A program made the translations under genes and the position numbers. Positions 9,963 through 60,556 of a stretch of 64,000 nt of DNA are shown piece after piece. The notes under the pieces are model-generated. The model did no database searches and had not been told where the DNA came from. It saw only the letters and a list, made by a program, of their open reading frames with translations. Within the stretch, counting starts at the first letter, position 1. Each line of letters starts with the position of its first letter. Location of the stretch: the IMG/VR virus record IMGVR_UViG_3300022698_000267, positions 186,001-250,000 of that record, one strand, 5' to 3'.

Positions 9963-9972
9963 AATACTAAAA
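9963..9972 (+). promoter_or_regulatory. Putative phage promoter motif AATACTAAAA
   Basis: Intergenic, ~30 nt before primase; the motif recurs at 10 other gene starts. Confidence 0.6.
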
Positions 9973-10003
9973 TTAAAGGGTTGGAGGGACTAAGAGGGTT
10001 GGA

Positions 10004-10921
10004 ATGCTAGAATTCTTTGATGTTTATTCGTACTTAAACGATAGATCTATAGACTACAGTGAAAGTGGAACTAACACCTCTTTTGGTTGGGTCAATATCG
10101 AGTGTCCATTCCCATATTGTGATGATCATTCAAATCATCTTGGAATAAATTTGGAATCCAAAGTTTTTCATTGTTGGAAATGTGGAACAAAAGGAGGCAT
10201 AACCAAATTAATACAAGAATTAGAGTCTTGTTCTTATAAACAGGCAAGTAGAATTGTTGAAGAATTTCAAGACATTGATTCTATAGCTTCATACTCGAAG
10301 TCAAGAAAAGAAGCAACAGTTCCAAGCAGATCCAATTTTATATATCCACCGAAAGGTTGTGTAAAAGAATTTCCAGAAGTGCATTTGCAATATCTACGAA
10401 GTAGGGATTTTGATCCATCTATTATTATTCCAAAATATGAGTTAATGGCTTGTCATACTGCTGGTGATTTTAAATTTAGAATCATCATCCCAATTATAGA
10501 AGATGGTGAGGTTGTTAATTTTACAACCAGAACTGTTATAAAGGATATGGAGCCAAGATATAAAATGGCTTCTATCAATAAGTACAATCCTATTACAGAC
10601 ATTTACGATTTGCTTTACAATTTTGATTCAGTACAAGAAAGAGCTTTTATTTTAGAGGGTCCTACAGATGTCTGGCGAATGGGAGATGGAAGTACTTGTA
10701 CATTCGGTACAGCATTAAGCAAACCACAGATTTTAAAACTAGCATCTTTAGAATTAGCAGTTTTAATTTTCGATTCTGAAGCAGAAGAAGATGCAAGAAG
10801 ACTTGAATATCAAATTCGACCCTTTACTGATACAGAAATAATCTTGTTAGATCCTGGATTAGATCCAGCACAGTTGAGACAAGATGAAGTTGAAGAGTTG
10901 AAAAGGGAATTTTCAATATGA
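10004..10921 (+). CDS. dnaG: DNA primase (Zn finger + TOPRIM)
   Basis: CPFPYC..H...CWKC zinc domain; EGPTD and FDSE TOPRIM motifs. Confidence 0.88.
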   Translation: MLEFFDVYSYLNDRSIDYSESGTNTSFGWVNIECPFPYCDDHSNHLGINLESKVFHCWKCGTKGGITKLIQELESCSYKQASRIVEEFQDIDSIASYSKSRKEATVPSRSNFIYPPKGCVKEFPEVHLQYLRSRDFDPSIIIPKYELMACHTAGDFKFRIIIPIIEDGEVVNFTTRTVIKDMEPRYKMASINKYNPITDIYDLLYNFDSVQERAFILEGPTDVWRMGDGSTCTFGTALSKPQILKLASLELAVLIFDSEAEEDARRLEYQIRPFTDTEIILLDPGLDPAQLRQDEVEELKREFSI

Positions 10922-12534
10922 GTGATGCCATTAGCCGTTTTAGGAGAGGTAAGAAAGGTAATGTAGATACAGACTTATCTTCTGAAAAATTAATGTTATC
11001 TGCTGCAATACTCTCCACTAATTTTTGTAGAACTGTCTTTAGAAAGTATAAACCTGAATTTATACAAAATGAATTCATTAGAGATAGTATGAATTGGTGT
11101 ATGGACTATTTTCGTGAATTCGATAAAGCACCAAAATCCGATATTGAAAGAGTATTTGAGTATAAATCTTCTAAGTTAGATCCATCTAGTAAAGAACTTA
11201 TTGAATATCTTCTATTTTCCATATCACAGGATTCTAAGGGTTTAGTTGTAAGCGATCATAACTATGTTCTAAAAGAAACTTTAAAGTATTTCAGGAAAAG
11301 ACACTTAGATATAGCTTTGATGAAGTCTAGAGCTCTTTTAGATTCTGGAAATGTAGATAAGGCAGTAGAGTCTATTGCTGGTGAAAATTTTCAGGAAGAC
11401 CTAGCTTACGAAGGAAGATTAGAAGATATTTTTGACAGAGAAAGTATAGAATCTGCTTGGTCTAAGGTTGATACTGAGCACGTTTTTGCTTTTAGTGGAG
11501 GAGCAGCAACATTAAATAAACTAGTTGGTTACATTAAGAAGGGTTGGTTGATGGCTTTTTTAGCTCCTCCAAAGAGGGGTAAGACCAGTTGGTTATTAGA
11601 AACTGCCTGTCAAGCAATGTCTTATGGTGCAAAAGTCCTTTTTGTTAGTTTGGAAATGAATTCCAAAGCAATAAGACAGAGATTCTATTCCAGATTTTTG
11701 AATAAACCTTACGGTTCATTCCAAAGTGAAAGAAATTTTAAAACAGGTCCTGGAGGAGAACTGCTTTCTAGGATTCCATATATAGACTGTGAACACAATA
11801 AAAGTAATTCTTGTAAAAGAGAGGAAAGGACAAAATATAAGACAGAACATTACCCATCTGATGATGTGGAAGATACTGAAGCGCCTTGCTTTGGTTGCAT
11901 CTACAGTCCAGAGTCTGATTTTTCTTTTAGTGTTGAGTCCATATGGGTTGAAGTTAATTCAAATTCTTATGAAGCAGATCACAGAAGCTTGTTTGCTATA
12001 GGAAGGCATCTAAAAAGGTATCTTAGATTAGTCACTTATCCCAGTTTTCTTGGTGGGATTGATGATATACAACAGGATTTAGAGGTTGCAAAATCTCAAG
12101 GGTTTCGACCTGATGTGATTATAATAGATTATGCCGATATTCTAAAGCCACCAGGATTTGGAGGTGGTGATCCAAGACATAATCTGGATTTAATTTGGAA
12201 GACTCTAAAAGGTTTGGCGGAGGCAACTAATTCTGTAGTTATAACTGCTAGTCAGACTAATAGAAAGGCTGTAGAGGAGAGGAGAATAGGACAAAAGCAT
12301 GTTGCTGAAGATTTTAGAAAACTCGCACATGTTGATGTTTTTATGGCTATAAATCAAAACGATTTTGAAAAGGATATTGGAATAAAAAGAATTAATGTTA
12401 TAGCCCATAGGCATAAAGATTTTTCTGAGAATGTAGAGTTGAATTTAACTGAAGCTTTACATATGGGTCAGGTTTGTGTTAGTTCCATTATTCCACCCAG
12501 AAAGAAGAAAAAGGAGGAAGATGAAGATGAGTAA
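10918..12534 (+). CDS. dnaB: Replicative DnaB-like helicase with a Cys-rich insertion
   Basis: APPKRGKT Walker A, SLEM, IIIDYAD, ASQTNR. Confidence 0.9.
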   Translation: MSDAISRFRRGKKGNVDTDLSSEKLMLSAAILSTNFCRTVFRKYKPEFIQNEFIRDSMNWCMDYFREFDKAPKSDIERVFEYKSSKLDPSSKELIEYLLFSISQDSKGLVVSDHNYVLKETLKYFRKRHLDIALMKSRALLDSGNVDKAVESIAGENFQEDLAYEGRLEDIFDRESIESAWSKVDTEHVFAFSGGAATLNKLVGYIKKGWLMAFLAPPKRGKTSWLLETACQAMSYGAKVLFVSLEMNSKAIRQRFYSRFLNKPYGSFQSERNFKTGPGGELLSRIPYIDCEHNKSNSCKREERTKYKTEHYPSDDVEDTEAPCFGCIYSPESDFSFSVESIWVEVNSNSYEADHRSLFAIGRHLKRYLRLVTYPSFLGGIDDIQQDLEVAKSQGFRPDVIIIDYADILKPPGFGGGDPRHNLDLIWKTLKGLAEATNSVVITASQTNRKAVEERRIGQKHVAEDFRKLAHVDVFMAINQNDFEKDIGIKRINVIAHRHKDFSENVELNLTEALHMGQVCVSSIIPPRKKKKEEDEDE

Positions 12535-14160: not shown

Positions 14161-14177
14161 AGGGGAGGAATTTAAAA

Positions 14178-20616: not shown

Positions 20617-23347
20617 TACTGAAGGTTTCTTCTTTAAAGAACCAACCTTGGCGGAGAAAAAAGCGGCTAGGAAGAGGGATTACAGTAAAGGTAATTCATC
20701 CAAGCCAAAGAAAAAAAGAGCAGCTTCTGGAAGTACAAAAACTGTTGATCAAAAATTGAAAGATAATCCTTGTGAAGTTTGTGGTCTTTACAAGAAAGGA
20801 TGTGAATCTCCATTCATGCAGTATACAGGAGAAGGAAGAACAAAAGCCCTTATTATTGGGGAAGCTCCAGGTGCTGCAGAAGACGCAAAGTGGAAAAAAT
20901 TGGGATATGATGTTCCAACTCAGTTTATTGGTGATGCTGGACAACTTCTTAGAAAGGAACTTCGTCTTCTTGGGTATAATCTGGATAAAGATTTTTGGAA
21001 GGTAAATGCTTGTAATTGTAGACCTCCTGGGAATGCCACACCAACTACCAAACAATTGAAAGCCTGTTGGAATTTCATAGTAGAACCAACCATTAAAAAG
21101 TTGAAACCAAAGGTCATTTTTCTAATGGGAGGAGCAGCAGTTGCTCAATACTTTGCAAAAATCTCTGGAAGTAAGAATGTTCTTGGTATAAATAGATGGA
21201 GAAGGCTTTGTATTCCAGATTTGGATTACGATGTTTGGGTAGTTCCTCTATTTCATCCGTCTTTCATTTTAAGGAAAAGAAATGATGCAAATCTAAAATC
21301 GGTTTATCAAAGAGATTTAAAATTTGCAATTTCTGCCATTTCTAAACCAAAGATTGAAAGAATTGATTATGAATCTAAAGTAGAAATTGTAAAAGATTTT
21401 GATAGAGTCTGTGAGGTTTTAATAGAAGCTAGAAAACAGAAGTTTATAGTTTTCGATTTTGAAACCTCTGGAAAGAAACCTTATGATTCTAAACATAGAA
21501 TATGGTCTATGTCTTTAGCTTGGAACAGAGAAAAGGCCTATTCTTTTGCTTATCAATATCCTGGATGTTGGACAGATGAGCAATTAAAAACAATTCAGAT
21601 ATTAGTTGCTGAATTATTAAATGATGAAAATGTTTTAAAAGGTGCACACAACCTGAAGTTCGAGCATCTTTGGTCTTGTAAATTCTTTACGGAACCGAAG
21701 AATTGGATTTGGTGTACTATGTTAACTGCTCATATTTTAGATAATAGGGGTGGTATTAGTGGATTAAAATTTCAGGTTTTCTATAGATATGGAATTCCAG
21801 ATTATGGAGCTAGTCTACATCAACTTATGATAAAGAAGGATCAGAATGGATTAAATCTATTGTATAAAGCTGATCTGGATGAATTGCTATTATATGGTGG
21901 ATTAGACAGTTTGTTCACTTTCATGCTGTTTGAGGATCAAAAATTAGAGCTCAGACGTTATAAGAATACGTTAAATATGGCTCATCCATTTTTTCATAAA
22001 GGCATTCTGGCTTTAGCAAGGGCTGAAATGAATGGATTTAATGTATCCATGGATTTTTATGAAGAAAAAGATGGAGAGCTTGCTGACCAGATTGCAGAAA
22101 TAGAGCATCGATTAGTTAATGGAGATTATGGTTCCAAATTTAGAGAGATAGAAGGAAAGGATATAAATCCCAGATCTACTTCCGATATTAAAAAGTTATT
22201 CTTTGATATTCTAAATATGAAACCTTTGAGAATGACTGACAAAGGGAATCCTGCTTTAGATAAATCTTGTATGGAAGAATGGAATCTACCATTTACCAAT
22301 GACATTCTACAGTTGAGGATGTTGGAGAAGATAAAAGGGACATATCTGGCTCAGTTTAAAAGAGAGGTTAATGAAGATGGAAGAATACACCCAAACTTTA
22401 ATCTTCACATTCCAAGGACTTATAGATCTAGCTCCAATGAACCAAATTTTCAGAACATTCCGGTTCGCAGCAAATTAGCAAAGGAAGTTACTAGAGGAGG
22501 AATAATTCCAAGTCCTGGTAACAGACTAATGGAAGGTGACTTTGGTAGCCTTGAAGTTAGAATTTCTGCTTGTTATCATAAAGATCCCAATATGTTAACG
22601 TACATCAATGATCCCACTACTGATATGCATAGGGATAGTGCAGCTGATATTTGGCTGCTAGAAACAGATGAAGTTTCAAAAGATATTCGATTTTATGCTA
22701 AAAATGGTTGGGTTTTCCCACAGTTCTATGGTGATTGGTATGATTCTTGTGCAAGGGGATTATGGGGTAATTGCTTAGAATTACAAACGGAAAGAAATAT
22801 AAGTTTATATGATCATATTAGGTCTAAAGGAATTAAAAATCTGGAAGATTTTATTGCTCATTGTAAAGATGTGGAAGACAAATTTTGGAACGTTCGTTTT
22901 AAAGTCTATAAAAAATGGAAGGATAAGATTAATAAGCAGTATAGAGATCAGGGTTACATAGAAACATACTTTGGTTTTCGTCTCGGTGGATACATGGGGA
23001 AGAAGGATGTTACTAATTATCCTATACAAAGCAGTGCTTTCCATTGTCTTCTATGGTCATTCATTAGGGCAGATGAAATAGCTCGTAAAGAAAGATGGAA
23101 GAGTAAGTTGATTGGTCAAATTCATGATAGTATTATAGCCGATTTGCATCCTGATGAAACGTATCATGTCATTGACACTTTGAATAATATTATGAATGTT
23201 CAAATGCGAGAAGAGCTTCCCTGGATTATTGTTCCTTTGGAAGTGGACTTTGAACTAACTGGAATAGATCAACCATGGTCAACGAAGGACGATTTTGATC
23301 TATCGCAATTATCAATTAAAAAAGAGGAAGAGGAGATGATGCTATGA
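20606..23347 (+). CDS. polA: Family A DNA polymerase with N-terminal family-4 uracil-DNA glycosylase domain and 3'-5' exonuclease
   Basis: UDG: CEVC, GEAPG, CRPPGN, HPS; exo: DFETSG, HNLKFE; pol: DFGSLEVR, KNG..FPQFYG, QIHDS. Confidence 0.95.
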   Translation: MILSTEGFFFKEPTLAEKKAARKRDYSKGNSSKPKKKRAASGSTKTVDQKLKDNPCEVCGLYKKGCESPFMQYTGEGRTKALIIGEAPGAAEDAKWKKLGYDVPTQFIGDAGQLLRKELRLLGYNLDKDFWKVNACNCRPPGNATPTTKQLKACWNFIVEPTIKKLKPKVIFLMGGAAVAQYFAKISGSKNVLGINRWRRLCIPDLDYDVWVVPLFHPSFILRKRNDANLKSVYQRDLKFAISAISKPKIERIDYESKVEIVKDFDRVCEVLIEARKQKFIVFDFETSGKKPYDSKHRIWSMSLAWNREKAYSFAYQYPGCWTDEQLKTIQILVAELLNDENVLKGAHNLKFEHLWSCKFFTEPKNWIWCTMLTAHILDNRGGISGLKFQVFYRYGIPDYGASLHQLMIKKDQNGLNLLYKADLDELLLYGGLDSLFTFMLFEDQKLELRRYKNTLNMAHPFFHKGILALARAEMNGFNVSMDFYEEKDGELADQIAEIEHRLVNGDYGSKFREIEGKDINPRSTSDIKKLFFDILNMKPLRMTDKGNPALDKSCMEEWNLPFTNDILQLRMLEKIKGTYLAQFKREVNEDGRIHPNFNLHIPRTYRSSSNEPNFQNIPVRSKLAKEVTRGGIIPSPGNRLMEGDFGSLEVRISACYHKDPNMLTYINDPTTDMHRDSAADIWLLETDEVSKDIRFYAKNGWVFPQFYGDWYDSCARGLWGNCLELQTERNISLYDHIRSKGIKNLEDFIAHCKDVEDKFWNVRFKVYKKWKDKINKQYRDQGYIETYFGFRLGGYMGKKDVTNYPIQSSAFHCLLWSFIRADEIARKERWKSKLIGQIHDSIIADLHPDETYHVIDTLNNIMNVQMREELPWIIVPLEVDFELTGIDQPWSTKDDFDLSQLSIKKEEEEMML

Positions 23348-24288
23348 GCGAAGGACCATTACAGATTTCGTGTCGACCAGATACTTTCGAAGATTTTGCA
23401 GGAAACAAGGGAACTGTTGCTTCTTTAAAAAGCGTATTAGAAAGAGAAGAAGGAAAAATCCCAAAATGTCTTTTATTTCATGGTCCTAGTGGTTGTGGAA
23501 AAACTACTTTAGTTCGAATTATTAGGGACAAAATTGGAACTCACGTAGACGATTTTGTGGAAATTAATGCCGCTCAGAATAGAGGCATTAATGAGATGAA
23601 ACAGATATTGGTCGAAGCTCCCTATTTTCCATTGCATGGTAAAAGTAAAATATACATGTTTGATGAAGCACATATGCTTACCCCAGAGGCCCAAAATAGT
23701 TTACTGAAATTTTTGGAAGAGCCTCCCAAACATGTCTATATAGCTTTATGTACTACTGAACCTCAAAAGCTATTAAAAACCATGCGAACTAGAAGTACGG
23801 CTTTTGTGGTTAAAAAGCAACCACTTCCAACAATAATGAAATTGTTAATGTGGGCTTGTAAAAGAAATGATCTTGCTATTTCAAAGGTTATTCTTAGAAA
23901 GATAGCAACTGTTGCTGATGGTTGTCCAAGACAGGCACTTGTGATTTTAGATTCTATCTATTCTTTGACAGATGAAGAACAAATTTTGGATGTAATCGAG
24001 ACTTATAGCGAAGTTGGAGAGCTTTTGTCTGCTAATACCCTAGAACTTTGTCAAGCCTTACTGGCGCAAAGAAAGTGGGATGTTGTTTCAAAAATACTAA
24101 ATAATGTTGAGGGGGAACCAGAAAATATCCGTTATGGAATTCTAGCCTATATGACTAAAGTTTTGCTTGGTGGAGATGAGCCACTAGCAGCTGCAGTTAT
24201 TGAACAATGTAGAGGATCTTATATGTACACAAAGAAAGCAGGATTAGTGTACGATTGCTATATGATTACTACTCTTGGAGATGAATAA
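23344..24288 (+). CDS. Clamp loader AAA+ subunit (DnaX/RFC-like)
   Basis: GPSGCGKT, DEAHML, LLKFLEEPP, CTTE, GCPRQAL. Confidence 0.9.
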   Translation: MSEGPLQISCRPDTFEDFAGNKGTVASLKSVLEREEGKIPKCLLFHGPSGCGKTTLVRIIRDKIGTHVDDFVEINAAQNRGINEMKQILVEAPYFPLHGKSKIYMFDEAHMLTPEAQNSLLKFLEEPPKHVYIALCTTEPQKLLKTMRTRSTAFVVKKQPLPTIMKLLMWACKRNDLAISKVILRKIATVADGCPRQALVILDSIYSLTDEEQILDVIETYSEVGELLSANTLELCQALLAQRKWDVVSKILNNVEGEPENIRYGILAYMTKVLLGGDEPLAAAVIEQCRGSYMYTKKAGLVYDCYMITTLGDE

Positions 24289-24844
24289 AGTGGCAGATGT
24301 TGACACAGATTCCTACGAATTTATGCAAACTACCTATAAAGAAGATCTCTTTATAGATAAGTATAATTTAGATATCGAGTGGTTGAAACAGCCTATGTTA
24401 TTTGTTAAATGGGCTGAAAGGTGGGCGGAGGCTGTAGAAAGGAGGGATAGAGCCAAGCAGTACTTAGAAGTTATTAAAGCGGAGATGTATACGAAGATCA
24501 AGAAAGATCCAGATGTGTATGGACTTCCGGATAAACCAACGGAAGGTGCAACTAATGCAATAGTTACCAAAAGTAAAAAATACAGATCAGCCTTCGAAGA
24601 TTATTTGGATCTAAATGGTCAGGTTAATGTTTTGGCTAGCGCAAAAGAAGCTATGAACCATAAGAAAAGGGCTTTGGAATACGTTAGTCAATTGATGCTC
24701 GGAGGCTTTTATTCAAATCCGAATATTAAAGCCGAAGCAAGACAAAAAGTAGAAAATGAGAAAGGTTCAGAAATTAGAGGGCACATCAAAGACTCGAATA
24801 GGATGCAGGCGCGAAGCCAATTAACCGATACCGAGAATGAATAG
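24281..24844 (+). CDS. uvsY: UvsY-like recombination mediator
   Basis: Helical protein with DLFIDKYNLDIEW and KPTEGA segments; lies before the SSB. Confidence 0.55.
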   Translation: MNKVADVDTDSYEFMQTTYKEDLFIDKYNLDIEWLKQPMLFVKWAERWAEAVERRDRAKQYLEVIKAEMYTKIKKDPDVYGLPDKPTEGATNAIVTKSKKYRSAFEDYLDLNGQVNVLASAKEAMNHKKRALEYVSQLMLGGFYSNPNIKAEARQKVENEKGSEIRGHIKDSNRMQARSQLTDTENE

Positions 24845-25931: not shown

Positions 25932-25941
25932 AATACTAAAT
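25932..25941 (+). promoter_or_regulatory. Putative phage promoter motif AATACTAAAT
   Basis: Intergenic, upstream of the metacaspase. Confidence 0.55.
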
Positions 25942-25996
25942 AAATGGTGATATGTCTATTTTGCGTATCACCATTTTTATTTACGGGGGAATTACG

Positions 25997-26857
25997 ATGA
26001 AAAAGGCATTATTAGTTGGTATAAACGAATATCAAGGGTCTCCTTTAAAGGGGTGTGTCAACGATTGTTTGTTGATGTATAAAATGCTCACCGAAGAATT
26101 TGATTTTGAAACCAAGGACATTAAACTGCTTACAGACCATGAGGCCACACAAGACAGAATATTGCTTGGTTTGTCAGCTTTGACGAGTGATGTACAACCA
26201 GGCGACACTATATACTTCCATTACAGTGGACATGGTTCTCAGGTGGCAGTAAATGATTGGACAGATAACTTTGAACCTGATGGAAGGGATGAGATTTTAT
26301 GTCCTGTGAATTTAAATTGGGATTTTCCTCTTAGAGACCAGATGGTTGGCAGTTTTTTCAAAGATTTACCAAAGGAAGTAAATGTGGTTGTTGTTTTGGA
26401 TTGTTGTCATTCTGGTACTGGTCTCAGGGCTCCAATTAATTCAAATTTAGATGGACCAAAGTGGTTAGCAAACCGGTTTTTGCCACCTCCCCCATCTAAA
26501 CTTCTTTCTAATCCATTAATTCGAGTTGATGCAGACATGAATTTTATACTTCCAGAACCAACTGAGGATCTTAGATCTATAAAGCGTCCTTTCTTGGTTG
26601 ATACAGTAGAACAGGGACATGTCATTTTAATTACTGGTTGTCAAGACAATCAGACTAGTGCAGACGCATATCTAGCAGGTACTTATCGTGGAGCTTTAAC
26701 TTATTGTCTATACTACGTCCTTTCAAAAAGGAAATTTAACATGAGTTATGAAAAACTAGTCATAGAGATCAATCGTTTGTTAGATAATAAACGATATGAC
26801 CAAAATCCACAATTAGAATGTCTTCCTGAATACAAAAACAGAAAATTTTTGGGATAG
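25997..26857 (+). CDS. Caspase-like peptidase C14 (metacaspase); start moved to ATG 25997
   Basis: KKALLVGIN, LKGCVND, HYSGHG (His), DCCHSG (Cys), QTSADA, GALT, QNPQL. Confidence 0.93.
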   Translation: MKKALLVGINEYQGSPLKGCVNDCLLMYKMLTEEFDFETKDIKLLTDHEATQDRILLGLSALTSDVQPGDTIYFHYSGHGSQVAVNDWTDNFEPDGRDEILCPVNLNWDFPLRDQMVGSFFKDLPKEVNVVVVLDCCHSGTGLRAPINSNLDGPKWLANRFLPPPPSKLLSNPLIRVDADMNFILPEPTEDLRSIKRPFLVDTVEQGHVILITGCQDNQTSADAYLAGTYRGALTYCLYYVLSKRKFNMSYEKLVIEINRLLDNKRYDQNPQLECLPEYKNRKFLG

Positions 26858-28532: not shown

Positions 28533-28607
28533 GCCTGTACGTCATTACAACAAATGTAAAGGACGTACAGGCGTTTCCGTGTACAGAGGTATGTCATGGT
28601 ATGGGGA
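28533..28607 (+). repeat. Structured intergenic element, copy 1 (hairpin + conserved tail)
   Basis: gcctgtacgtc/gacgtacaggc 11-bp stem; tail 32/42 identical to 39350-39391. Confidence 0.7.
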
Positions 28608-28637
28608 TAGTTACAAACTCTAATAGAAATGGATTCT

Positions 28638-28647
28638 AATACTAAAA
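28638..28647 (+). promoter_or_regulatory. Putative phage promoter motif AATACTAAAA
   Basis: Intergenic, upstream of the resolvase. Confidence 0.6.
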
Positions 28648-28689
28648 CCTTTTGAAAGAATTTCTTGTAATACTTCAATGGAGTTTCTG

Positions 28690-29253
28690 ATGGCTAAAGG
28701 TGGACAATTTGAACGTGATGTTTGTAAAGAACTTTCATTATGGTGGACAGAAGGGGAAAGAGATGATATATTTTGGAGAACATCAGGTTCCGGTGCAAGG
28801 GCAAAAACTAGATCTAGACAGCAGAATAAAACCACAGCCTATTCATATGGGGATGTAACTTTTACCGATCCAATTGGTCAACCACTCATTGCTAAATGTA
28901 TATTAGAACTTAAAAGAGGTTATGGTAAGTGGTCACCTTTGGATCTGGTGGATAGACCAAAAATGCGTAAAAATGCTAAGAAAATGCCGTTACAAACTCT
29001 GGAATCTTTTATAGAACAGGTTATGGAGGATGTAACAAATGCTGGAGGCTTTCATCATCCCATTTTAATTTGTAGAAGAGATGGAAGAAGGAAGTTTATA
29101 GGAATTACAGACAGATTATTTCGAGCAATGGTAAATATGTTTGGATATCCTGAAACAACAATACTTAGAATTAACACCAATCCATCTTTTCGATTTATGT
29201 CCTACCGATTTTTTCTTGATTGGTGTCATCCAGATTTTTTCAAATCCTGTTAA
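28690..29253 (+). CDS. Holliday junction resolvase (PD-(D/E)xK, Hjc-like); start moved to ATG 28690
   Basis: KGGQFER, RTSGSG, GDV, ELKRGY. Confidence 0.8.
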   Translation: MAKGGQFERDVCKELSLWWTEGERDDIFWRTSGSGARAKTRSRQQNKTTAYSYGDVTFTDPIGQPLIAKCILELKRGYGKWSPLDLVDRPKMRKNAKKMPLQTLESFIEQVMEDVTNAGGFHHPILICRRDGRRKFIGITDRLFRAMVNMFGYPETTILRINTNPSFRFMSYRFFLDWCHPDFFKSC

Positions 29254-29293
29254 AAACATTCATATAATACTTGAAATAACAATAAAATTCTGT

Positions 29294-29303
29294 TATACTA
29301 AAA
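29294..29303 (+). promoter_or_regulatory. Putative phage promoter motif TATACTAAAA
   Basis: Intergenic, upstream of the ligase. Confidence 0.6.
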
Positions 29304-29335
29304 TTAAGTTATAAATATAAATGGAGGTTTTATTG

Positions 29336-31207: not shown

Positions 31208-31225
31208 ACAAGGAGGTGTTTTTAC

Positions 31226-31561
31226 GTGATTAATTTAGATAAAAATGATGATATCGATATTAAGGTTTCGATTATTGGTTTACCACAGAGTGGGAAGTCC
31301 ACAATAATTTATCTGCTAACAAGAGCATTACAGGATATTGGGATGAAAGTGACTGCTTATGATTCAGAACCATTAAAAAATCATGATTCCAATATTCATT
31401 TGAAATGTGAAGCTCTAAGAGGAAAAAAGATTTCTATTCATACCATAGCTTTGAAAAGCAAGGATTTTAGTAGCATGGCACCGGAAATGCAAGGTGTAGA
31501 GGCTCTTCGTGAAAGAGTTCGAGATTCTAAACGTAGAAGGGGTCCAACTGATACTTTTTAA
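31226..31561 (+). CDS. Mini P-loop protein (paralog A)
   Basis: IIGLPQSGKST Walker A in a 111-aa protein. Confidence 0.65.
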   Translation: MINLDKNDDIDIKVSIIGLPQSGKSTIIYLLTRALQDIGMKVTAYDSEPLKNHDSNIHLKCEALRGKKISIHTIALKSKDFSSMAPEMQGVEALRERVRDSKRRRGPTDTF

Positions 31562-31602
31562 AAAGAACAGGTTACTTTAACTATTGATTCTGGGGGGACA
31601 AA

Positions 31603-32556: not shown

Positions 32557-32561
32557 CAAAA

Positions 32562-32571
32562 AATACTAAAA
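32562..32571 (+). promoter_or_regulatory. Putative phage promoter motif AATACTAAAA
   Basis: Intergenic, upstream of mini P-loop B. Confidence 0.6.
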
Positions 32572-32602
32572 TTTATAGAAATTAATTTCAATGGAGGGTA
32601 GC

Positions 32603-32854
32603 ATGGGGAAAAAGGAGTTACAAATACTGATAATTGGAGAAGCTGGTAGAGGTAAATCTACAATGGCTAGAATTATTCAACATGCTTTACAAGATCGTGA
32701 GTTTGATGATGTAACTATTAAAGATGAAATTGTAGAAGGTGTTCCAGATTCTTTCAATGAGGACGTCAGTATGAATCTTCGTTGTGAGGCTATAAAGGAT
32801 CTTTCAGTACTCATTAAAACCAAACAGTCGGTGAAAGGAGGATTCAATGTTTAG
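32603..32854 (+). CDS. Mini P-loop protein (paralog B); start moved to ATG 32603
   Basis: IIGEAGRGKST; aligns with paralog A. Confidence 0.65.
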   Translation: MGKKELQILIIGEAGRGKSTMARIIQHALQDREFDDVTIKDEIVEGVPDSFNEDVSMNLRCEAIKDLSVLIKTKQSVKGGFNV

Positions 32855-33518: not shown

Positions 33519-33530
33519 TAGGAGAAAATC

Positions 33531-34320: not shown

Positions 34321-34322
34321 TG

Positions 34323-34364
34323 AATTCAAAAAATATTTGAATTAAATTCAAAAAAATACTATAT
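34323..34364 (+). promoter_or_regulatory. Alternating AATTCAAA/TTTGAATT repeats followed by AATACTATAT motif
   Basis: aattcaaa 34323-30, tttgaatt 34336-43, aattcaaa 34345-52, motif 34355-64. Confidence 0.5.
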
Positions 34365-34390
34365 TTCTATAAAATAAATGGAGAATAAGA

Positions 34391-35612: not shown

Positions 35613-35622
35613 AATACTATAT
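35613..35622 (+). promoter_or_regulatory. Putative phage promoter motif AATACTATAT
   Basis: Intergenic, upstream of the vWA/PurA-like module. Confidence 0.5.
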
Positions 35623-39469: not shown

Positions 39470-39487
39470 TATACTAATATACTAATA
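39470..39487 (+). promoter_or_regulatory. Tandem putative promoter motif TATACTAATA x2
   Basis: Intergenic, upstream of pncB. Confidence 0.55.
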
Positions 39488-41188: not shown

Positions 41189-41198
41189 AATACTAAAT
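41189..41198 (+). promoter_or_regulatory. Putative phage promoter motif AATACTAAAT
   Basis: Intergenic, upstream of sbcC-N. Confidence 0.6.
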
Positions 41199-41236: not shown

Positions 41237-42430
41237 ATGATTAAAGAAATTGAAATTAAAAATTTTCAGTCACATGTATATTCAAAAATTCAATTACATC
41301 CTGGAGTCAACGTTATTACTGGATCTACAGATTCTGGTAAATCTTCTGTAATACGTGCGTCTAAATGGCTTATTCAAAATAGACTAAAGAAAGGTATAAA
41401 ATTATACAGATCTCATCTTGCAGGGAAATCTGAACCAATGAGTGTTACTATGACTTTTTCAGATGGCACAAAAATAGAAAGACACTCATCTACAGCTATG
41501 AATGCTTATATCATACATCCACATGAACCTCTAAAAGCTATTCGAAGTGAAGTTCCACAAGAGGTTTTCACAGCTTTAAGGATGAATGAAATTAACATCG
41601 AAGAACAACACGACCCTTATTTTCTTCTGGACGACAGTCCTGGACAAGTTGCTTCCAAATTCAATGAAGTGATTAAATTGGAGGCTATGGACGAAGTTAT
41701 GTCTATGGCCAATACAGATATTGATACAACCAAGAAAGAACTTGTAAAGGCTGAACAATCTGCAAAGGAAAAATTAAAGCAAATAGAAGAATTGGATTGG
41801 ATTTCAGAAGCTTCTGGACGCATGGAAGATTTGGACTTCTACATGAAGATAAAAACAGATTTAGAAACCAAAATTCCAGAAATTTCTTCTATTTTAGAAA
41901 GGATTAATATTCTTGAATCAGACATTTCTGTATGTAAAGCTGTTCTTGAATTGGATACAATACTAACAGAAATAGAACAAACGAACAGCAAAATTTTACA
42001 GCTTGAAAAGTTGTTGAAAACAATAGAAGTTTTACAGAACGATTTGCAGCAATTCGATGTGTTGTCAGAAATAGAAGAAAATTACAATGAACTTAAATCT
42101 AAGAATATTAAATACAAACTTCTTCGATCTGATATTGAAAATCTGGAGGGTTTTCTTTTCAAATATTCATCTTTGAAGAATGATTTAAATATTCTAAAGA
42201 AGTTTGATTCTATAGAAGATCCTCTTAAAAACCTGGAAAATTTGCAAGTCAAAATCTTATCTTTAAAAAGTAAGATTATTAAACTAGAGAATAATCTTGC
42301 TTCAATACTTGAATCACAGGATAGGATAGAATATTTAAAAGATTCTGTCTTGGAGATGGAAGAGAAATTACATAAAATCATTGGACAGTATGAAATATGT
42401 CCTCTATGTGGAAGACAAATTGATGACTAA
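41237..42430 (+). CDS. sbcC: SbcC/Rad50 N-terminal half (Walker A, Q-loop, coiled coil, ends at zinc hook)
   Basis: IKNFQSH, GSTDSGKS, terminal CPLCG. Confidence 0.85.
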   Translation: MIKEIEIKNFQSHVYSKIQLHPGVNVITGSTDSGKSSVIRASKWLIQNRLKKGIKLYRSHLAGKSEPMSVTMTFSDGTKIERHSSTAMNAYIIHPHEPLKAIRSEVPQEVFTALRMNEINIEEQHDPYFLLDDSPGQVASKFNEVIKLEAMDEVMSMANTDIDTTKKELVKAEQSAKEKLKQIEELDWISEASGRMEDLDFYMKIKTDLETKIPEISSILERINILESDISVCKAVLELDTILTEIEQTNSKILQLEKLLKTIEVLQNDLQQFDVLSEIEENYNELKSKNIKYKLLRSDIENLEGFLFKYSSLKNDLNILKKFDSIEDPLKNLENLQVKILSLKSKIIKLENNLASILESQDRIEYLKDSVLEMEEKLHKIIGQYEICPLCGRQIDD

Positions 42431-45143: not shown

Positions 45144-45331
45144 AACATTTTATCAGTCAACTTGGTCAGCAATGTTAAATTAGCTGGCTTCCCAGCTTTC
45201 ACCTTGCCTTTATTTTTAATCAAATGAGGAGGAGATCCAAACAGATCTTCTGCATGGTTACAGATGATCTGTTGAGCCATCTCCCTTTTACAATTTCTCA
45301 GAATTCGTAAAAAGCTTCGACTATTTCGCAA
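45140..45331 (-). CDS. Small basic hypothetical protein
   Basis: 63 aa; overlaps the upstream stop. Confidence 0.4.
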   Translation of the reverse strand: MRNSRSFLRILRNCKREMAQQIICNHAEDLFGSPPHLIKNKGKVKAGKPANLTLLTKLTDKMF

Positions 45332-46163
45332 TTTTAATATTCATAGTCAATGTTATTGCACATTGACCTGTGCTTCCAGAATTTAAAATCAATCCACTTG
45401 GAAATAGATCATTAGATACTGATGGATACCTAGATTTCAGCAATAATCTATCCATCAGTGTTGCATTTGAAACATCGAATGTTTTGGCGTAAATTCCAAC
45501 TCCTGTAATTGGATCTGTTTCAGCTCCAGAATAGGTGGTTGACATTTCACAAATGTAAATGTTATAGTTATTGTCTTCCATCCAATCCAAATTCACAGCA
45601 GAATATTCTAGACCTAACTTAGTTGTAAAGTCTGTCATATCTGTAGTGACTACTGAAGCATCAGTGGCTAAATCAAAGTAGATCGATGTTACTACTGTTG
45701 TCCCTCTATCAAAATCCAATGTGATAGCAGTGCCATCTTCTGGAGCGGTTGCAAACTCTAAAGCTAGAGTTCCATCCTGTGAAATGGTGCCAGATGTAAG
45801 TCCGGATCCCGTTAGCGAACCAACAGAATCTGCTGAAGCTGTTTTTGCTCCACTTTCAGTCCAGTTTAAAACGACAGAATCAATATCTATTGGAGCGAAA
45901 GCAGTGAGAGTTTTGTTGAAGGTTGTTGTTGCACCATCACCAATCCCAATTAACACATCTGTAAAGCCAGATCCAAGAATACTGGGATCTAAAACTTCTG
46001 AACCATTGGCAATTTTGTTGAAGAAAACATCTGTCATGTATTTACTGGTTTTGACTGAGTTGGACACTTTGTCTATTTGGAATTGTTTATCCCAAACCTC
46101 TTCCAGTGAAGCATCCTTTTGACAGACCCGAAGATAACTTTCTATATCTAGATTAAGTCTCAT
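45321..46163 (-). CDS. Probable tail/baseplate structural protein
   Basis: GIGDGATTTF...GTISQDGTLALEFATAPEDGTAI motif typical of tail/baseplate proteins; Thr/Gly-rich. Confidence 0.55.
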   Translation of the reverse strand: MRLNLDIESYLRVCQKDASLEEVWDKQFQIDKVSNSVKTSKYMTDVFFNKIANGSEVLDPSILGSGFTDVLIGIGDGATTTFNKTLTAFAPIDIDSVVLNWTESGAKTASADSVGSLTGSGLTSGTISQDGTLALEFATAPEDGTAITLDFDRGTTVVTSIYFDLATDASVVTTDMTDFTTKLGLEYSAVNLDWMEDNNYNIYICEMSTTYSGAETDPITGVGIYAKTFDVSNATLMDRLLLKSRYPSVSNDLFPSGLILNSGSTGQCAITLTMNIKIAK

Positions 46164-46206: not shown

Positions 46207-47145
46207 CTAATGTTTTAAAATTTTCTTTACAGTATCTTTACAAGACTTGGATATAATATCGTTCTTCGTTTCTAACGATTTAGAAAGACAAGTTGAATCA
46301 AATATTGAAACCAAAAGTCTTTGATCTATCTCTTTTCTATCTGGGTCTTCTCTCTTTCTCAGAGCTTTCTTTTGTGTATCTACAAGTTCACAAATGCACC
46401 CATCCAAAATGAAGAAATCTCTTGCAACTTGTACATCTGGTTCATCTAGTATCAATAGTGAGAAATCAGATGTTTTAGATTTGAATACGAATGAATCTTC
46501 ATCTAAATTTTCTGTCATATTGGAATCATTCACAATATTATGTCTGTTTACTAAATGATCCCAGAATAATTCTTCAATATTTCTACCTTCTCTTTTTGCC
46601 AACTCCTGACAGATTTCATAAAGTAGAAATAATGATAGTTTTGCAATGTACCCATCTTCTTGAAAAATTATATCTGAACAGAAAGAACCTTTGATAATGA
46701 TTTTTCTCATTTCATTGAAAAATTCGAAAGTTGCAGCTTTGTGTTCTGGATAATCATAAACTGGAAATTCTTGTCTTGATTCACTGATGAATGATAGTAT
46801 GTAATTTGTTTTTTCCTTATCGTTGCAATAAGATAGGAGTTTTTCTAATGTATTTTCCGAATACTCGTCATTTTTGATGGTTAAGTCTGTTGAGATATAA
46901 ATCATGGGAAAGATAAATTTCATTACATTCTTTCCTCTAATAGAATCTAATTCAATCATATGTCCATTTTCCAATTTGCTGCATATGGTTACAATGGAAG
47001 AATTTCTTTGTTTGGAAAATAATAATACTGATAAAACTTCTAAATTCCAATCATTCTCCATCATAAATTTTCTTCGAACGAAGTCCAAATTTTCATAAGA
47101 TATTTTCGATAATTCCATAGTCAGTACATCCTCCTGAGATTTCAT
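46207..47145 (-). CDS. Hypothetical protein
   Basis: 312 aa ORF. Confidence 0.7.
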   Translation of the reverse strand: MKSQEDVLTMELSKISYENLDFVRRKFMMENDWNLEVLSVLLFSKQRNSSIVTICSKLENGHMIELDSIRGKNVMKFIFPMIYISTDLTIKNDEYSENTLEKLLSYCNDKEKTNYILSFISESRQEFPVYDYPEHKAATFEFFNEMRKIIIKGSFCSDIIFQEDGYIAKLSLFLLYEICQELAKREGRNIEELFWDHLVNRHNIVNDSNMTENLDEDSFVFKSKTSDFSLLILDEPDVQVARDFFILDGCICELVDTQKKALRKREDPDRKEIDQRLLVSIFDSTCLSKSLETKNDIISKSCKDTVKKILKH

Positions 47146-49835: not shown

Positions 49836-50204
49836 TTACTCCGGCAAAATCATCACAATACCATTCTCAAATTCCACTCTAATTCGTTTTTTTGTATCGA
49901 TGAAGCCAAAGCTAGCATGTTGAAAATCATCTACTGCCATAGACCCTATGAATTTTTGGAAGTATTCTATTCCAGTTAACCATTCTAAATCGCCTTTCAT
50001 AACACAAATGTGTTGATTATTGATAGTCAAAGCAACAGAAACCCATTGTACTTTTTCATCTTTAAAACTGGCTATTGTAAAGTCTCTCATGACTCTATAA
50101 GCCGTTTTTTCAGCAGTAGCTTTGTAATCTTTCAAATTATGCTGCCAGATTTTACTTTGTCCATTTTCATCGATAATAGAAATAGAGATAACAAAATCAT
50201 TCAT
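49836..50204 (-). CDS. Hypothetical protein
   Basis: 122 aa, coupled. Confidence 0.6.
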   Translation of the reverse strand: MNDFVISISIIDENGQSKIWQHNLKDYKATAEKTAYRVMRDFTIASFKDEKVQWVSVALTINNQHICVMKGDLEWLTGIEYFQKFIGSMAVDDFQHASFGFIDTKKRIRVEFENGIVMILPE

Positions 50205-51060
50205 TCTCAGACTCCAGTTGGTATTTAAAATGTTTGGATCTACAAATTAATAGAAGGAGATTACGTAACGATTTTTCAATCTTTTTATTTCCAGTGTATT
50301 CTATGAAATTTTTTAGAAATGTTTCTATTTGATACACTTTAAATTTTTTATCTCCTTTATTAGTGGCATTTCTTATAATGTATCCTAATAACAAAGCTCT
50401 TGTTAGACTTAATTCAAAATCCTTACCAGAAAATTGTGCCTCCAAGACCTGTTGTATAATGTTCCGTATATACCATTGTAATTGATTCATTCCAGCGTAA
50501 GACATTAATGAATTATATTCTGTTTTAATTTCATCATTCGTTAAAAATCGAAAAATATGAAGTATTTTGGCTTTTTTCTTCCACCAAGTGAAATAATTTT
50601 TAGAATGATACTCTTCTGTTTGTATAAGGTTTTCTTCATTCCAAGATGCTATGATGTAAGGAATCTTACTTTTCTTGGAAATTTTGTAGTTGATATATAT
50701 TGGTATTTTTTCTCCAAGACAAAAAATCGAAAAGATTAAGTATATTGGATAATATTTTCCATATCCAATAATTTCTAAAAAATTTTGAACTGCTGCACCA
50801 CGTTCTTTTCCAAAGGCATGTTTAGAAGAACAGTTTTGACAGAGGGTTTCAAAATAATTTTCTTGGCATTCTATTGGAAGTGCATTTGTAAACAAAGCTA
50901 CGTACATTCGTTTTTCACTTAAAGCGCATATTTCTTGCATTTCTTGATGATCAGGATCTTGTGTTACGTCTATTCCAGACCAATACCTGTCTAGATAATC
51001 ATAACATCTAGAGTCTTGACTTAATCTTATTCTTTCTATACATGATATTTCGTTTCCCAT
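50197..51060 (-). CDS. Hypothetical protein
   Basis: 287 aa; GGAGG RBS; promoter motif upstream. Confidence 0.7.
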   Translation of the reverse strand: MGNEISCIERIRLSQDSRCYDYLDRYWSGIDVTQDPDHQEMQEICALSEKRMYVALFTNALPIECQENYFETLCQNCSSKHAFGKERGAAVQNFLEIIGYGKYYPIYLIFSIFCLGEKIPIYINYKISKKSKIPYIIASWNEENLIQTEEYHSKNYFTWWKKKAKILHIFRFLTNDEIKTEYNSLMSYAGMNQLQWYIRNIIQQVLEAQFSGKDFELSLTRALLLGYIIRNATNKGDKKFKVYQIETFLKNFIEYTGNKKIEKSLRNLLLLICRSKHFKYQLESENE

Positions 51061-51082: not shown

Positions 51083-51092
51083 TTTTAGTATT
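51083..51092 (-). promoter_or_regulatory. Putative phage promoter motif AATACTAAAA (minus strand)
   Basis: ttttagtatt on +, 23 nt upstream of the 51060 start. Confidence 0.6.
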
Positions 51093-56591: not shown

Positions 56592-56605
56592 ATGGGGGAT
56601 TTAAA

Positions 56606-57352: not shown

Positions 57353-57379
57353 CCCGTGGGTTTCCCCACGGGTCTTTTA
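57352..57379. terminator. Intrinsic terminator between convergent genes
   Basis: acccgtggg-tttc-cccacgggt stem followed by ctttt. Confidence 0.75.
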
Positions 57380-57380
57380 T

Positions 57381-59666: not shown

Positions 59667-59678
59667 TTACGTCCCCCA

Positions 59679-60521
59679 TTATTTTCCCAATCTAGTTTTT
59701 AATACTTCAAGTTGAAATCCATAACAATGAAGACCTTGACTATCGAAAGTTAAAGGTCCCGGTTCCACCCCTTCAAGTTGAGCGGCAATATACTCATTCA
59801 AAAGAGTAAACCCTCCCATATTCTCAGGAAAACCACCGTATAAATCCCAACTTCTAAAGGTGATTCCCATAATTAATTTTCCACCTTTTATCTTTAGATC
59901 AATGCCTCTAAGACAAGGGGATGTTCCCCTCTCAAATTCTTCTTTCCATGGTCTATCATAAGACAGACAAGAATATCTGTCGCCGACTGTAATGTGACAG
60001 TGATTGTTGCCATATCCTTTGGTTTGGAAATGATTGATTACCCATTCCAATTGTGTATTGATTTTCCCGAGTGGACACTTCTTAACATATAGAATAGATG
60101 TTTTACTAATCATACAAATTGGGGAATCGTAAGCGCTGCCTTCACCTTCCAAATGCTCGCATTTCACACATCTACAATATTCTGGATAAGGGAGCATTTG
60201 CCCATTAATCCAGGTGGAATATCGGTATTCTTCTTCTGGTGTTAGATTGGGGTCCATTAAATAATTTGCAAAGTATTGCTCGATGGCATCATCATCGGTT
60301 GGAACTGGAAGTCCAGAACCCTCAGGAACTCTGGGGGCCAATGGCCTTTCATGCACTTTATGAATAAATCCGGAAACTTTATCGAATTCCAGCCTTGTAT
60401 CTCCTGCATAACTTCCTGCAGTAATTTCATATTTTCTCCCAACTTCATTAATGTTATATAATAGTTGGAACCAAGCATCATCTAATGTTGTTGCCTCTAT
60501 AAATCGTGGTTTAAATTCCAT
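59679..60521 (-). CDS. thyA: Thymidylate synthase, short archaeal/deltaproteobacterial type, with a Cys-rich insert
   Basis: SPCL, FRSWD...N (Asn177 equivalent), LHCY. Confidence 0.85.
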   Translation of the reverse strand: MEFKPRFIEATTLDDAWFQLLYNINEVGRKYEITAGSYAGDTRLEFDKVSGFIHKVHERPLAPRVPEGSGLPVPTDDDAIEQYFANYLMDPNLTPEEEYRYSTWINGQMLPYPEYCRCVKCEHLEGEGSAYDSPICMISKTSILYVKKCPLGKINTQLEWVINHFQTKGYGNNHCHITVGDRYSCLSYDRPWKEEFERGTSPCLRGIDLKIKGGKLIMGITFRSWDLYGGFPENMGGFTLLNEYIAAQLEGVEPGPLTFDSQGLHCYGFQLEVLKTRLGK

Positions 60522-60546
60522 AAGACTCCTCCAATTTTTTTATTTA

Positions 60547-60556
60547 ATTTAGTAGA
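60547..60556 (-). promoter_or_regulatory. Variant promoter motif TCTACTAAAT upstream of thyA-nrdJ
   Basis: One mismatch to WATACTAAA; oriented toward thyA. Confidence 0.4.

What the first reader, a model, noticed from the sequence alone, without database searches (positions are those of the whole stretch)
9963..60556. Recurrent WATACTAWA motif 20-55 nt upstream of at least 10 genes, always co-oriented: a phage-specific promoter regulon
Seen at 9963, 25932, 28638, 29294, 32562, 34355, 35613, 39470/39478 and 41189 (+), at 51083 (-), and as a variant at 60547 (-). It precedes primase, caspase, resolvase, ligase, mini P-loop B, rtcB, the vWA module, pncB, sbcC and thyA. I saw no consistent -35. 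A rough hand estimate gives about a dozen chance hits in the whole window, but intergenic DNA is only a few percent, so the enrichment looks real. Inference: a middle-gene promoter, perhaps read by the 3502-4527 protein.
Basis: partly seen in the sequence, partly recalled or inferred. Interest (0 to 1): 0.65.

Follow-up and report, generated by a model that had tools for sequence, protein, structure and literature searches.

The report
Phage middle-gene promoter motif ATACTAA
A short DNA word (ATACTAA) sits just upstream of the replication, repair and nucleotide-metabolism genes of an uncultivated 274-kb phage and its closest relatives, and is most likely a -35-less promoter read with a phage-encoded sigma factor: real, but an ordinary kind of phage regulation.

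Summary
WATACTAWA occurs 14 times in the window against 4.5±2.3 in shuffles. In the whole 273.6-kb phage genome the better-defined core ATACTAA has 39 intergenic copies against 7 expected. It points toward the downstream gene 27:2 in tandem gaps. It is common in divergent gaps and rare in convergent gaps and coding DNA. Two related phages keep the heptamer at orthologous sites while its flanks diverge.

Site 29294 is the -10 of a sigma70-type early promoter (about 38 near-identical copies elsewhere in the genome). Sites 34355 and 35613 (ATACTAT) look like degenerate copies of that class. Site 25932 is doubtful.

The true ATACTAA class has no -35. The genes behind it that could be named by family search are all DNA/RNA/nucleotide-metabolism genes; the rest have no family match. 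This fits a middle class. A third motif, TAAAAC[CA]T, precedes head, portal and giant ORFs, so it is probably late.

Its distant homologues travel with TAAAACAT, not ATACTAA. A SigA-like phage sigma at genome 106,723-107,754, with changed -12-reading residues, is the better candidate reader.

No transcription-start data could be obtained. This is a new member of a known kind.

The parts
7545..7551 (+). Class-2 site ATACTAA, overlapping the stop codon of ORF 5851-7551 and 65 nt upstream of 7617-7970.
   Evidence: Relative G001 keeps ATACTAAAAT at the orthologous site, and L136 has TTTACTAAAAT.
9964..9970 (+). Class-2 site (AAAATACTAAAAT), 33 nt upstream of the DnaG-type primase 10004-10921, which is followed by a DnaB-like helicase.
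   Evidence: AATACTAAAAT is invariant in G001 and L136 while the flanks and the distance to the start codon diverge (32 nt against about 87 nt).
25933..25939 (+). ATACTAA 12 nt upstream of the annotated start of the caspase-like peptidase 25952-26857. A doubtful member.
   Evidence: It is not conserved in G001. It lies between the upstream stop codon and a 14-bp hairpin at 25942-25976 that covers the start codon.
28639..28650 (+). Composite AATACTAAAACCTT, where class-2 ATACTAA overlaps class-3 TAAAACCT. It lies about 30 nt upstream of the PDDEXK nuclease 28678-29253.
29252..29300 (+). NOT class 2. This is a sigma70-type (class 1, early-type) promoter: upstream block, -35 TTGAAA (29271-29276), 17-nt spacer with TGn, and -10 TATACT (29294-29299). 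It lies before the NAD-dependent DNA ligase 29321-31207.
   Evidence: It has the same architecture as about 38 copies at genome 105.8-157 kb.
32563..32569 (+). Class-2 site (AAAAAATACTAAAAT), 21 nt upstream of the small P-loop ORF 32591-32854.
34337..34365 (+). It lies upstream of RtcB 34391-35575.
35613..35621 (+). AATACTATA, which is ATACTAT rather than ATACTAA. It has a weak class-1-like upstream block and lies 55 nt upstream of 35677-36060. Class uncertain.
39471..39485 (+). Two overlapping class-2 cores (ATACTAAT ATACTAAT), 28-36 nt upstream of the nicotinamide/nicotinate phosphoribosyltransferase-like gene 39514-40689.
41190..41196 (+). Class-2 site (TTTTAAAATACTAAATAG), 40 nt upstream of the SbcC-like/exonuclease gene 41237-42430.
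51085..51091 (-). Class-2 site (AAGAATACTAAAAAAAAG), 24 nt upstream of 50197-51060 (-), a gene of unknown function.
60549..60555 (-). Variant core CTACTAA, 27 nt upstream of thymidylate synthase 59679-60521 (-).
   Evidence: The same variant lies upstream of genes at genome 8445(-), 65881, 75335 and 142371.
3502..4527 (-). Probably the late (class-3) specificity factor.
   Evidence: No Pfam, PHROG or PDB sequence hit. It has 18 homologues. The AF2 model has pLDDT 64. The Foldseek top 41 matches are all sigmaA/sigma70/HrdB chains, at E 0.05-0.9. VIA-align's top hit is 7d7d_F at Z 8.6 and 2.8 A over 110 residues, followed by several sigma chains. Co-occurrence with AAAACAT is shown.
5420..5427 (+). 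Class-3 motif TAAAACAT, 28 nt upstream of 5456-5854. Context only, not part of the ATACTAA class.
   Evidence: It is conserved in L136.
60580..60587 (+). Class-3 motif TAAAACAT, 42 nt upstream of the 1824-aa ORF that starts at 60630. Context only.
46210..46217 (-). Class-3 motif TAAAACAT, 46 nt upstream of 45321-46163 (-). Context only.

Best explanation
(A)A-ATACTAA-(A/T) is the single, -10-like element of a phage-specific promoter class that has no -35 box. It drives the replication, repair and nucleotide-metabolism ('middle') genes of this 274-kb phage and its closest relatives.

The proposed cascade is as follows.
1. Host RNA polymerase with its primary sigma reads about 38 near-consensus TTGACA-N17-TATAAT/TATACT early promoters.
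2. The first of these (genome 105,865) drives an operon that encodes a SigA-like phage sigma (genome 106,723-107,754).
3. This sigma, in which the residues that normally read the -12 base are replaced, directs host core polymerase to the ATACTAA promoters.
4. A second, gp55-like sigma-domain protein (window 3502-4527, minus strand) reads a third single-element motif, TAAAAC[CA]T, upstream of head, portal and giant structural genes.

What is shown: the motif's enrichment, its strand and gap-type distribution, its conservation, the functions of the downstream genes, and the existence of both sigma-like proteins. What is inferred: that the motif is a promoter, its timing, and which factor reads it.
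For: Enrichment. Intergenic copies number 39 against 7.0 expected, while coding copies (58) are near their expectation of 47.8. ATACTAA is the second strongest intergenic k-mer family, after the sigma70-type promoter.

Orientation. In tandem gaps 27 copies point toward the gene and 2 point away (p = 1.6e-6). Density is 2.10 per kb in divergent gaps, 1.70 in tandem gaps, 0.37 in convergent gaps and 0.23 in coding DNA.

Position. 29 of the 39 intergenic copies end 2-65 nt (median about 26) upstream of a co-oriented start.

Conservation. Relative G001 (DNA polymerase 73% identical) has 12 of its 25 copies in the 7% of its DNA that is intergenic. It keeps the heptamer at orthologous sites before five genes while flanks and spacing diverge. 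L136 keeps AATACTAAAAT before the primase. At genome 173,271-173,350 a 74-nt divergent gap holds ATACTAA back-to-back with TAAAACAT in both genomes, which leaves no room for another promoter.

Function of downstream genes. Those named are primase/helicase, PDDEXK nuclease, NAPRT-like enzyme, SbcC-like exonuclease, thymidylate synthase, branch-migration helicase, endonuclease V, HD phosphohydrolase and exonuclease. None is structural.

Candidate factors. The phage sigma matches Sigma70_r2 and PHROG_351 and aligns to SigA regions 2-4. Its family has an invariant WWIWES..N where group-1 sigmas have WWIRQAITR. This agrees with the base before ATACT being A, T or G rather than T. Relatives that carry this sigma also carry ATACTAA before minus-strand genes.
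Against: There are no transcription-start or RNA data: no sequencing run was listed.

The motif is short and AT-rich, and 58 copies lie in coding DNA.

That protein retains a region-4-like C-terminus, yet no -35 is seen.

Some listed sites are not conserved (25932) or are composite (28638-28650).

Gene starts come from a simple ORF caller, so the distances are approximate.
Confidence: 0.6

Rival explanations
1. One reading: ATACTAA promoters are read by the gp55-like protein encoded at window 3502-4527 (minus strand), acting like T4 gp55 on a single -10-type element.
For: The protein's model matches T4 gp55 best (7d7d_F, Z 8.6) and then other sigma domain-2 chains. gp55-type factors use promoters without a -35 element (PMC7892883; PMC2988020), as this class does. 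In G001 the gene's own upstream gap carries ATACTAAT on both strands.
Against: Loci around its 35-42% identical homologues in three distant phages have AAAACAT in 12 of 26 copies intergenic, all in sense orientation. They have ATACTAA in 1 of 16 copies intergenic, none in sense orientation. DNA-polymerase loci of distant relatives also lack intergenic ATACTAA. The protein's many invariant residues fit the widely conserved motif better than the clade-specific one. The structural match is below the level that is safe for helical proteins (note).
Confidence: 0.2
2. ATACTAA sites are weak, -35-less promoters of the host primary sigma, with the hexamer WATACT as a -10. They might be helped by an unidentified phage activator or appropriator and would not be read by a phage sigma.
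For: WATACT shares A-11 and T-7 with TATAAT, and TATACT is the -10 of many of the phage's own early promoters. Distant relatives have TGTATAAT-type extended -10 motifs in the corresponding replication regions.
Against: There is no TGn extension and no -35, and the -12 position is T in only about a quarter of sites. The extra conserved AA(A/T) after the hexamer, the functional segregation from the early class, and the presence of a dedicated phage sigma all argue for a separate recognition mode.
Confidence: 0.15
3. The motif acts in RNA rather than DNA, as a processing site or a translational-operator site in leaders of transcripts that start further upstream.
For: It is always on the sense strand and upstream of the ribosome-binding site, and there is a modest sense excess inside coding DNA (37:20).
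Against: The distance to the start codon is variable (2-65 nt) and is not conserved between orthologues (32 nt against about 87 nt before the primase). In short divergent gaps there is no room for a separate upstream promoter. Its rarity in convergent gaps fits a promoter.
Confidence: 0.05

Closest known systems
Bacteriophage T4 late promoters (TATAAATA) read by gp55 with gp33 and the gp45 clamp
   Same: Both are a single AT-rich -10-type element with no -35, placed shortly upstream of a temporally defined gene set. Both are read by host core polymerase plus a phage sigma-domain-2 protein (PMC7892883; PMC2988020). This phage also encodes a protein whose model best matches gp55.
   Different: The sequence is different (ATACTAA or TAAAACAT, not TATAAATA). 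The ATACTAA class drives replication and repair genes, not structural genes. No gp33 or clamp dependence was tested. The phage is not T4-like: its DNA polymerase is a family-A, Pol I type.
Phage-encoded sigma70-family factors that redirect host polymerase to middle or late promoters (Bacillus phage SPO1 gp28 and gp33/34; phiEco32 gp36). Named from my own knowledge, not checked here.
   Same: An early-expressed phage sigma replaces the host sigma and defines a new promoter consensus for the next temporal class.
   Different: As I recall, SPO1 gp28 promoters have both -35 and -10 elements, whereas here no -35 is seen. The sigma here is a SigA-like 343-aa protein with regions 2-4 and an unusual invariant WWIWES..N in region 2.4.
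The phage's own class-1 early promoters (TTGACA-N17-TATAAT/TATACT)
   Different: Class 1 has a strong -35, a conserved upstream block (TTCAAAWAGTAC) and a conserved leader (TTTAAGWGGTTGGGGA). It precedes small genes clustered at 105.8-157 kb. Class 2 has none of these features.

Membership tests
Bacterial/phage promoter (-10-type element) | Enriched in non-coding DNA upstream of genes and oriented with the gene | tested here: met
   39 intergenic copies against 7.0 expected; 27:2 orientation in tandem gaps; 29 of 39 lie within 70 nt of a co-oriented start.
Bacterial/phage promoter (-10-type element) | Present in divergent gaps and absent from convergent gaps (a promoter, not a terminator) | tested here: met
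   2.10 per kb in divergent gaps against 0.37 per kb in convergent gaps.
Bacterial/phage promoter (-10-type element) | Conserved at orthologous positions in relatives while the flanks drift | tested here: met
   Five orthologous sites in G001 and the primase site in L136. One site (25932) is not conserved.
Bacterial/phage promoter (-10-type element) | A transcription start a few nucleotides downstream | not testable with these tools
   No sequencing run was listed for this phage.
Sigma70-type (-35/-10) promoter | A TTGACA-like hexamer 16-18 nt upstream of the -10 | tested here: not met
   The information profile upstream of 38 sites is flat, and the consensus scan does not pick these sites. 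The exceptions are 29294 and 34355, which are therefore reclassified.
T4-type late promoter system (gp55) | A sigma region-2-only specificity factor encoded by the phage | tested here: inconclusive
   The model of the 3502-4527 protein (pLDDT 64) matches 7d7d_F at Z 8.6 and several sigma domain-2 chains. There is no sequence-level support, and the Z-score is below the level that is safe for helical folds.
T4-type late promoter system (gp55) | TATAAATA consensus and dependence on a sliding clamp and co-activator | tested here: not met
   The consensus is ATACTAA (or TAAAACAT for class 3), not TATAAATA. Clamp dependence was not tested.
Sigma70 family (the phage sigma at genome 106,723-107,754) | Region 2 present, with alignment to regions 3-4 of primary sigmas | tested here: met
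   Pfam Sigma70_r2 at 31.8 bits, above the cut-off of 24. PHROG_351 at E 1.7e-24. Aligns to SigA residues 108-355. The Pfam r4 model itself gives no hit.

The most novel reading that the evidence does not exclude
An uncultivated jumbo-phage lineage runs a three-tier transcription cascade with two previously undescribed specificity factors.

The first is a SigA-like sigma family with an invariant WWIWES..N region 2.4. It would read a -35-less AATACTAA(A/T) element.

The second is a sequence-orphan protein with a gp55-like fold. It would read TAAAACAT late promoters, a motif conserved across a much wider clade of giant phages that encode Laminin_G-rich giant proteins. That would extend gp55-type late transcription beyond T4-like phages.
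Probability: 0.35. Interest if true: 0.55.

Novelty: new member of a known kind. Interest (0 to 1): 0.4.

Why it matters
The result gives a usable regulatory map for an uncultivated 274-kb phage: three promoter classes and two candidate phage sigma factors. It shows that a simple degenerate motif can merge distinct promoter classes. It also identifies a sequence-orphan protein family as a probable gp55-like transcription factor. If that is confirmed, late-gene prediction in a broad group of metagenomic giant phages becomes possible from the sequence TAAAACAT alone. The principle itself, phage sigma factors redirecting host polymerase to -35-less promoters, is well established.

Tried and rejected
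1. RNA evidence. The look-up of sequencing runs on window 28600-34599 listed no run, so read laying was not used and no transcription starts could be mapped.

2. Finding relatives through the early-promoter 18-mer in IMG/VR. This gave 67 loci, none truly related by tblastx.

3. The search for related loci with the phage sigma as a single query found nothing. Relatives came instead from the DNA polymerase and from the two large protein searches.

4. 'The phage sigma lacks region 4, and that explains the missing -35'. Rejected, because the pairwise alignment to SigA covers region 4.2, even though the Pfam r4 model is silent.

5. Sequence-level tests of the 3502-4527 protein as a sigma were all negative: Pfam at E <= 10, PDB phmmer, BLASTP and hhalign against the phage sigma, and Pfam on all 18 homologues. 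Only fold comparison and one weak protein-atlas lead point to sigma.

6. Terminator or 3'-end signal. Rejected on the convergent-versus-divergent distribution. The generic terminator scan shows no enrichment.

7. Literature search for the motif returned only lepidopteran mitochondrial-genome papers.

8. Comparing the MAG sigma P0026 with the neighbouring ORF 4598-5422 found no similarity.
Full report
**Setting.** The window is positions 186,001-250,000 of a single 273,563-bp IMG/VR virus record. The record is linear, estimated 97% complete, and 35.8% G+C. It has no close relative among deposited phage genomes; its family-A DNA polymerase is only about 25% identical to the best hits. I called genes with a simple longest-ORF procedure, which gave 395 ORFs and 9.0% intergenic DNA. 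Distances to start codons are therefore approximate.

**Checking the observation.** WATACTAWA occurs 14 times in the window. Dinucleotide-preserving shuffles give 4.5 ± 2.3, and none of 100 shuffles reaches 14. The site given as 51083 is at 51084-51092. The 39470/39478 pair and the thyA site are variants. Nine matches lie 11-55 nt upstream of a co-oriented start. The other five (4301, 6442, 24093, 53111, 61080) are inside coding DNA, and two of these are antisense.

An unbiased comparison of intergenic against coding k-mers over the whole genome gives two strong signals. One is AGTACTTGACA, with TATAAT/TATACT. The other is ATACTAA.

**Two classes were merged.** The first signal is a very regular sigma70-type promoter:
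- Its form is AAAAnnTTCAAAWAGTACTTGACA, a 17-nt spacer, TATAAT or (TGT)TATACT, and then a conserved leader TTTAAGWGGTTGGGGA.
- About 38 copies lie at genome 105.8-157 kb, mostly before small genes. One copy lies in the window at 29252-29300, before the NAD-dependent ligase.
- Sites 34355 and 35613 read ATACTAT, not ATACTAA. Site 34355 sits inside TTCAAAAAATATTTGAAT-N17-TATATT, a degenerate copy of the same architecture. For 35613 I see only a weaker resemblance to that upstream block, read by eye.

The second signal is the real new class: ATACTAA, usually in the context AA-ATACTAA-(A/T). The information profile upstream is flat, so there is no -35. CTACTAA and TTACTAA variants are also used, for example before thyA.

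**Statistics for ATACTAA**:

| Measure | Observed | Expected or comparison |
|---|---|---|
| Intergenic copies | 39 | 7.0 (Markov-1 model of intergenic DNA; Poisson P = 5e-17) |
| Coding copies | 58 | 47.8 |
| Tandem gaps, toward : away from the gene | 27 : 2 | binomial p = 1.6e-6 |
| Density, divergent gaps | 2.10 per kb | |
| Density, tandem gaps | 1.70 per kb | |
| Density, convergent gaps | 0.37 per kb | |
| Density, coding DNA | 0.23 per kb | |

This is the distribution expected of promoters, not of terminators. Twenty-nine of the 39 intergenic copies end 2-65 nt upstream of a co-oriented start.

**Relatives.**
- *G001.* A scan with the DNA polymerase found 61 related loci. One is close: G001, a 55-kb contig with 73% polymerase identity, syntenic with genome 167-214 kb. 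In G001, 12 of 25 ATACTAA copies lie in the 7% of its DNA that is intergenic. The heptamer is kept at orthologous positions before five genes, including the primase and the 7617 gene, while the flanks and the spacing to the start codon diverge.
- *L136.* A second relative, a 9-kb contig, also keeps AATACTAAAAT before the primase.
- *A compact conserved arrangement.* At genome 173,271-173,350 a 74-nt divergent gap carries ATACTAA on one strand back-to-back with TAAAACAT on the other. G001 has the same arrangement. This leaves no space for another promoter.
- *Not conserved.* Site 25932, before the caspase-like gene, is absent in G001. It lies just before a hairpin that covers the start codon, so I treat it as doubtful.
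- *Distant relatives.* Phages with about 35-45% polymerase identity do not use ATACTAA. Their replication regions are enriched in TGTATAAT-type motifs.

**Which genes carry the motif.** Every gene behind an ATACTAA site that could be named is involved in DNA, RNA or nucleotide metabolism:
- DnaG-type primase and DnaB-like helicase
- PDDEXK nuclease
- phosphoribosyltransferase (NAPRT-like)
- SbcC-like exonuclease
- thymidylate synthase
- a branch-migration helicase
- endonuclease V
- an HD phosphohydrolase
- an exonuclease

A third motif, TAAAAC[CA]T, has 25 of its 56 copies in intergenic DNA, and 17 of those are in sense orientation within 70 nt of a start. It precedes the major head protein, the portal and giant ORFs, and it also lacks a -35. 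The simplest reading is three temporal classes: early (sigma70-type), middle (ATACTAA) and late (TAAAACMT). Timing is inferred from gene function only, because no sequencing run could be listed.

**Who reads it.** Two candidate factors exist.

*Candidate 1: a SigA-like phage sigma at genome 106,723-107,754.*
- This 343-aa protein lies in the operon behind the first early promoter (105,865).
- It matches Pfam Sigma70_r2 and PHROG_351, and it aligns to SigA regions 2-4.
- Its eight-member family has an invariant KF.TYA.WWIWES..NG where group-1 sigmas have WWIRQAITR.
- From established knowledge of E. coli sigma70, Q437 and T440 in that segment read the -12 base. Their replacement fits a motif in which the base before ATACT is A, T or G rather than T.
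- Contigs carrying this sigma (L148, from the same metagenome as G001, plus L149 and L150) have ATACTAA before minus-strand genes, back-to-back with class-1 promoters.

- It has no Pfam, PHROG or PDB sequence match.
- An AlphaFold model built from 18 homologues (pLDDT 64) is all-helical, with two domains joined by a disordered stretch (residues 200-262).
- The Foldseek top 41 hits are all sigmaA/sigma70/HrdB chains, at weak E-values of 0.05-0.9.
- The exhaustive aligner ranks 7d7d_F first (Z 8.6, 2.8 Å over 110 residues), followed by several sigma domain-2 chains. Entry 7D7D is the T4 late activation complex (PMC7892883). By its length and residue numbering, chain F fits gp55; that identification is my inference.
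- For helical proteins this Z-score is not decisive, so I rate the fold assignment at about 0.6.
- Loci around three distant homologues (35-42% identity) show AAAACAT with 12 of 26 copies intergenic, all in sense orientation. ATACTAA shows 1 of 16 intergenic, none in sense orientation.

The widely conserved factor therefore travels with the widely conserved motif. I assign the gp55-like protein to TAAAACMT and the SigA-like sigma to ATACTAA. Both assignments are inferences from co-occurrence.

**Rivals.** They are weighed in the rival section. A terminator role is rejected by the gap-type distribution.

**Verdict.** The motif is a real, conserved, oriented upstream element, and most probably a middle-class promoter without a -35. 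This kind of regulation is well known in phages. The specific motifs and the two factor families appear undescribed: a literature search for the motif found nothing relevant.

Noticed in passing
Genome 105,865-156,800 (outside the window); one copy at window 29252-29300: About 38 near-identical ~70-bp early promoters of the form TTCAAAWAGTACTTGACA-N17-TATAAT/TATACT. Each is followed by a conserved transcribed leader, TTTAAGWGGTTGGGGA, whose role is unknown. The same promoter architecture occurs in sigma-bearing relatives L148-L151.
   Followed up: partly
Window 5420, 46210(-), 60580; genome 4120, 5463, 9615(-), 12219(-), 22818, 39184(-) and others: A third upstream motif, TAAAAC[CA]T, with no -35. 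It lies before the major head protein, the portal and giant ORFs. It is conserved in distant relatives L144-L146 (12 of 26 AAAACAT copies intergenic, all in sense orientation). Probably the late promoter.
   Followed up: partly
Window 25942-25976: A 14-bp-stem hairpin followed by a T-run covers the start codon of the caspase-like gene. G001 has a different-sequence hairpin at the same place (ATGGCGACA...TGTCGCCAT). It could be a terminator of the upstream gene or a translational control element.
   Followed up: no
Window 28638-28650: The composite sequence AATACTAAAACCTT contains both the ATACTAA and the TAAAACCT motifs, overlapping by three bases. It lies upstream of the PDDEXK nuclease gene.
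   Followed up: no
Window 24093-24101 (inside ORF 23344-24288): An in-frame AAAAATACTAAATAAT inside coding DNA is conserved in G001 (L076:13488). It could be an internal promoter for 24275-24844, or it could simply reflect conservation of the coding sequence.
   Followed up: no
Genome 1.9-2.5 kb, 30.8 kb and 256-265 kb (window positions ~70,000-79,000 lie beyond the window): Long runs of AGT/TCA-type repeats (ACTACTTGAACTACT on the minus strand) occur inside very large ORFs. They would encode serine-rich low-complexity linkers. Relatives carry giant Laminin_G_3/DUF2341 proteins of 1,900-3,000 aa.
   Followed up: no
L147 (NCBI GCA_042215745.1, contig JBDGUR010000100.1, 2,745 bp): A contig binned as 'Candidatus Aenigmatarchaeota archaeon' carries homologues of the gp55-like protein (51% identity) and of the phage sigma (35% identity), adjacent and divergent. 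It is most likely phage DNA mis-binned into an archaeal MAG. The adjacency hints at a functional link between the two factors.
   Followed up: partly
Genome ~129-142 kb (outside the window): tRNA-like 3' ends (for example GGTTCGAATCC...CCA) lie directly upstream of several small ORFs in the early region, which suggests a phage tRNA cluster. No tRNA was found in the window itself.
   Followed up: no
L069-L129 (DNA-polymerase loci of distant relatives): Pooled intergenic DNA of about 60 distant relatives is enriched in TGTATAAT, TATAATAT and TATAACAT rather than ATACTAA. The ATACTAA specificity therefore appears to be a recent change within a narrow clade.
   Followed up: partly
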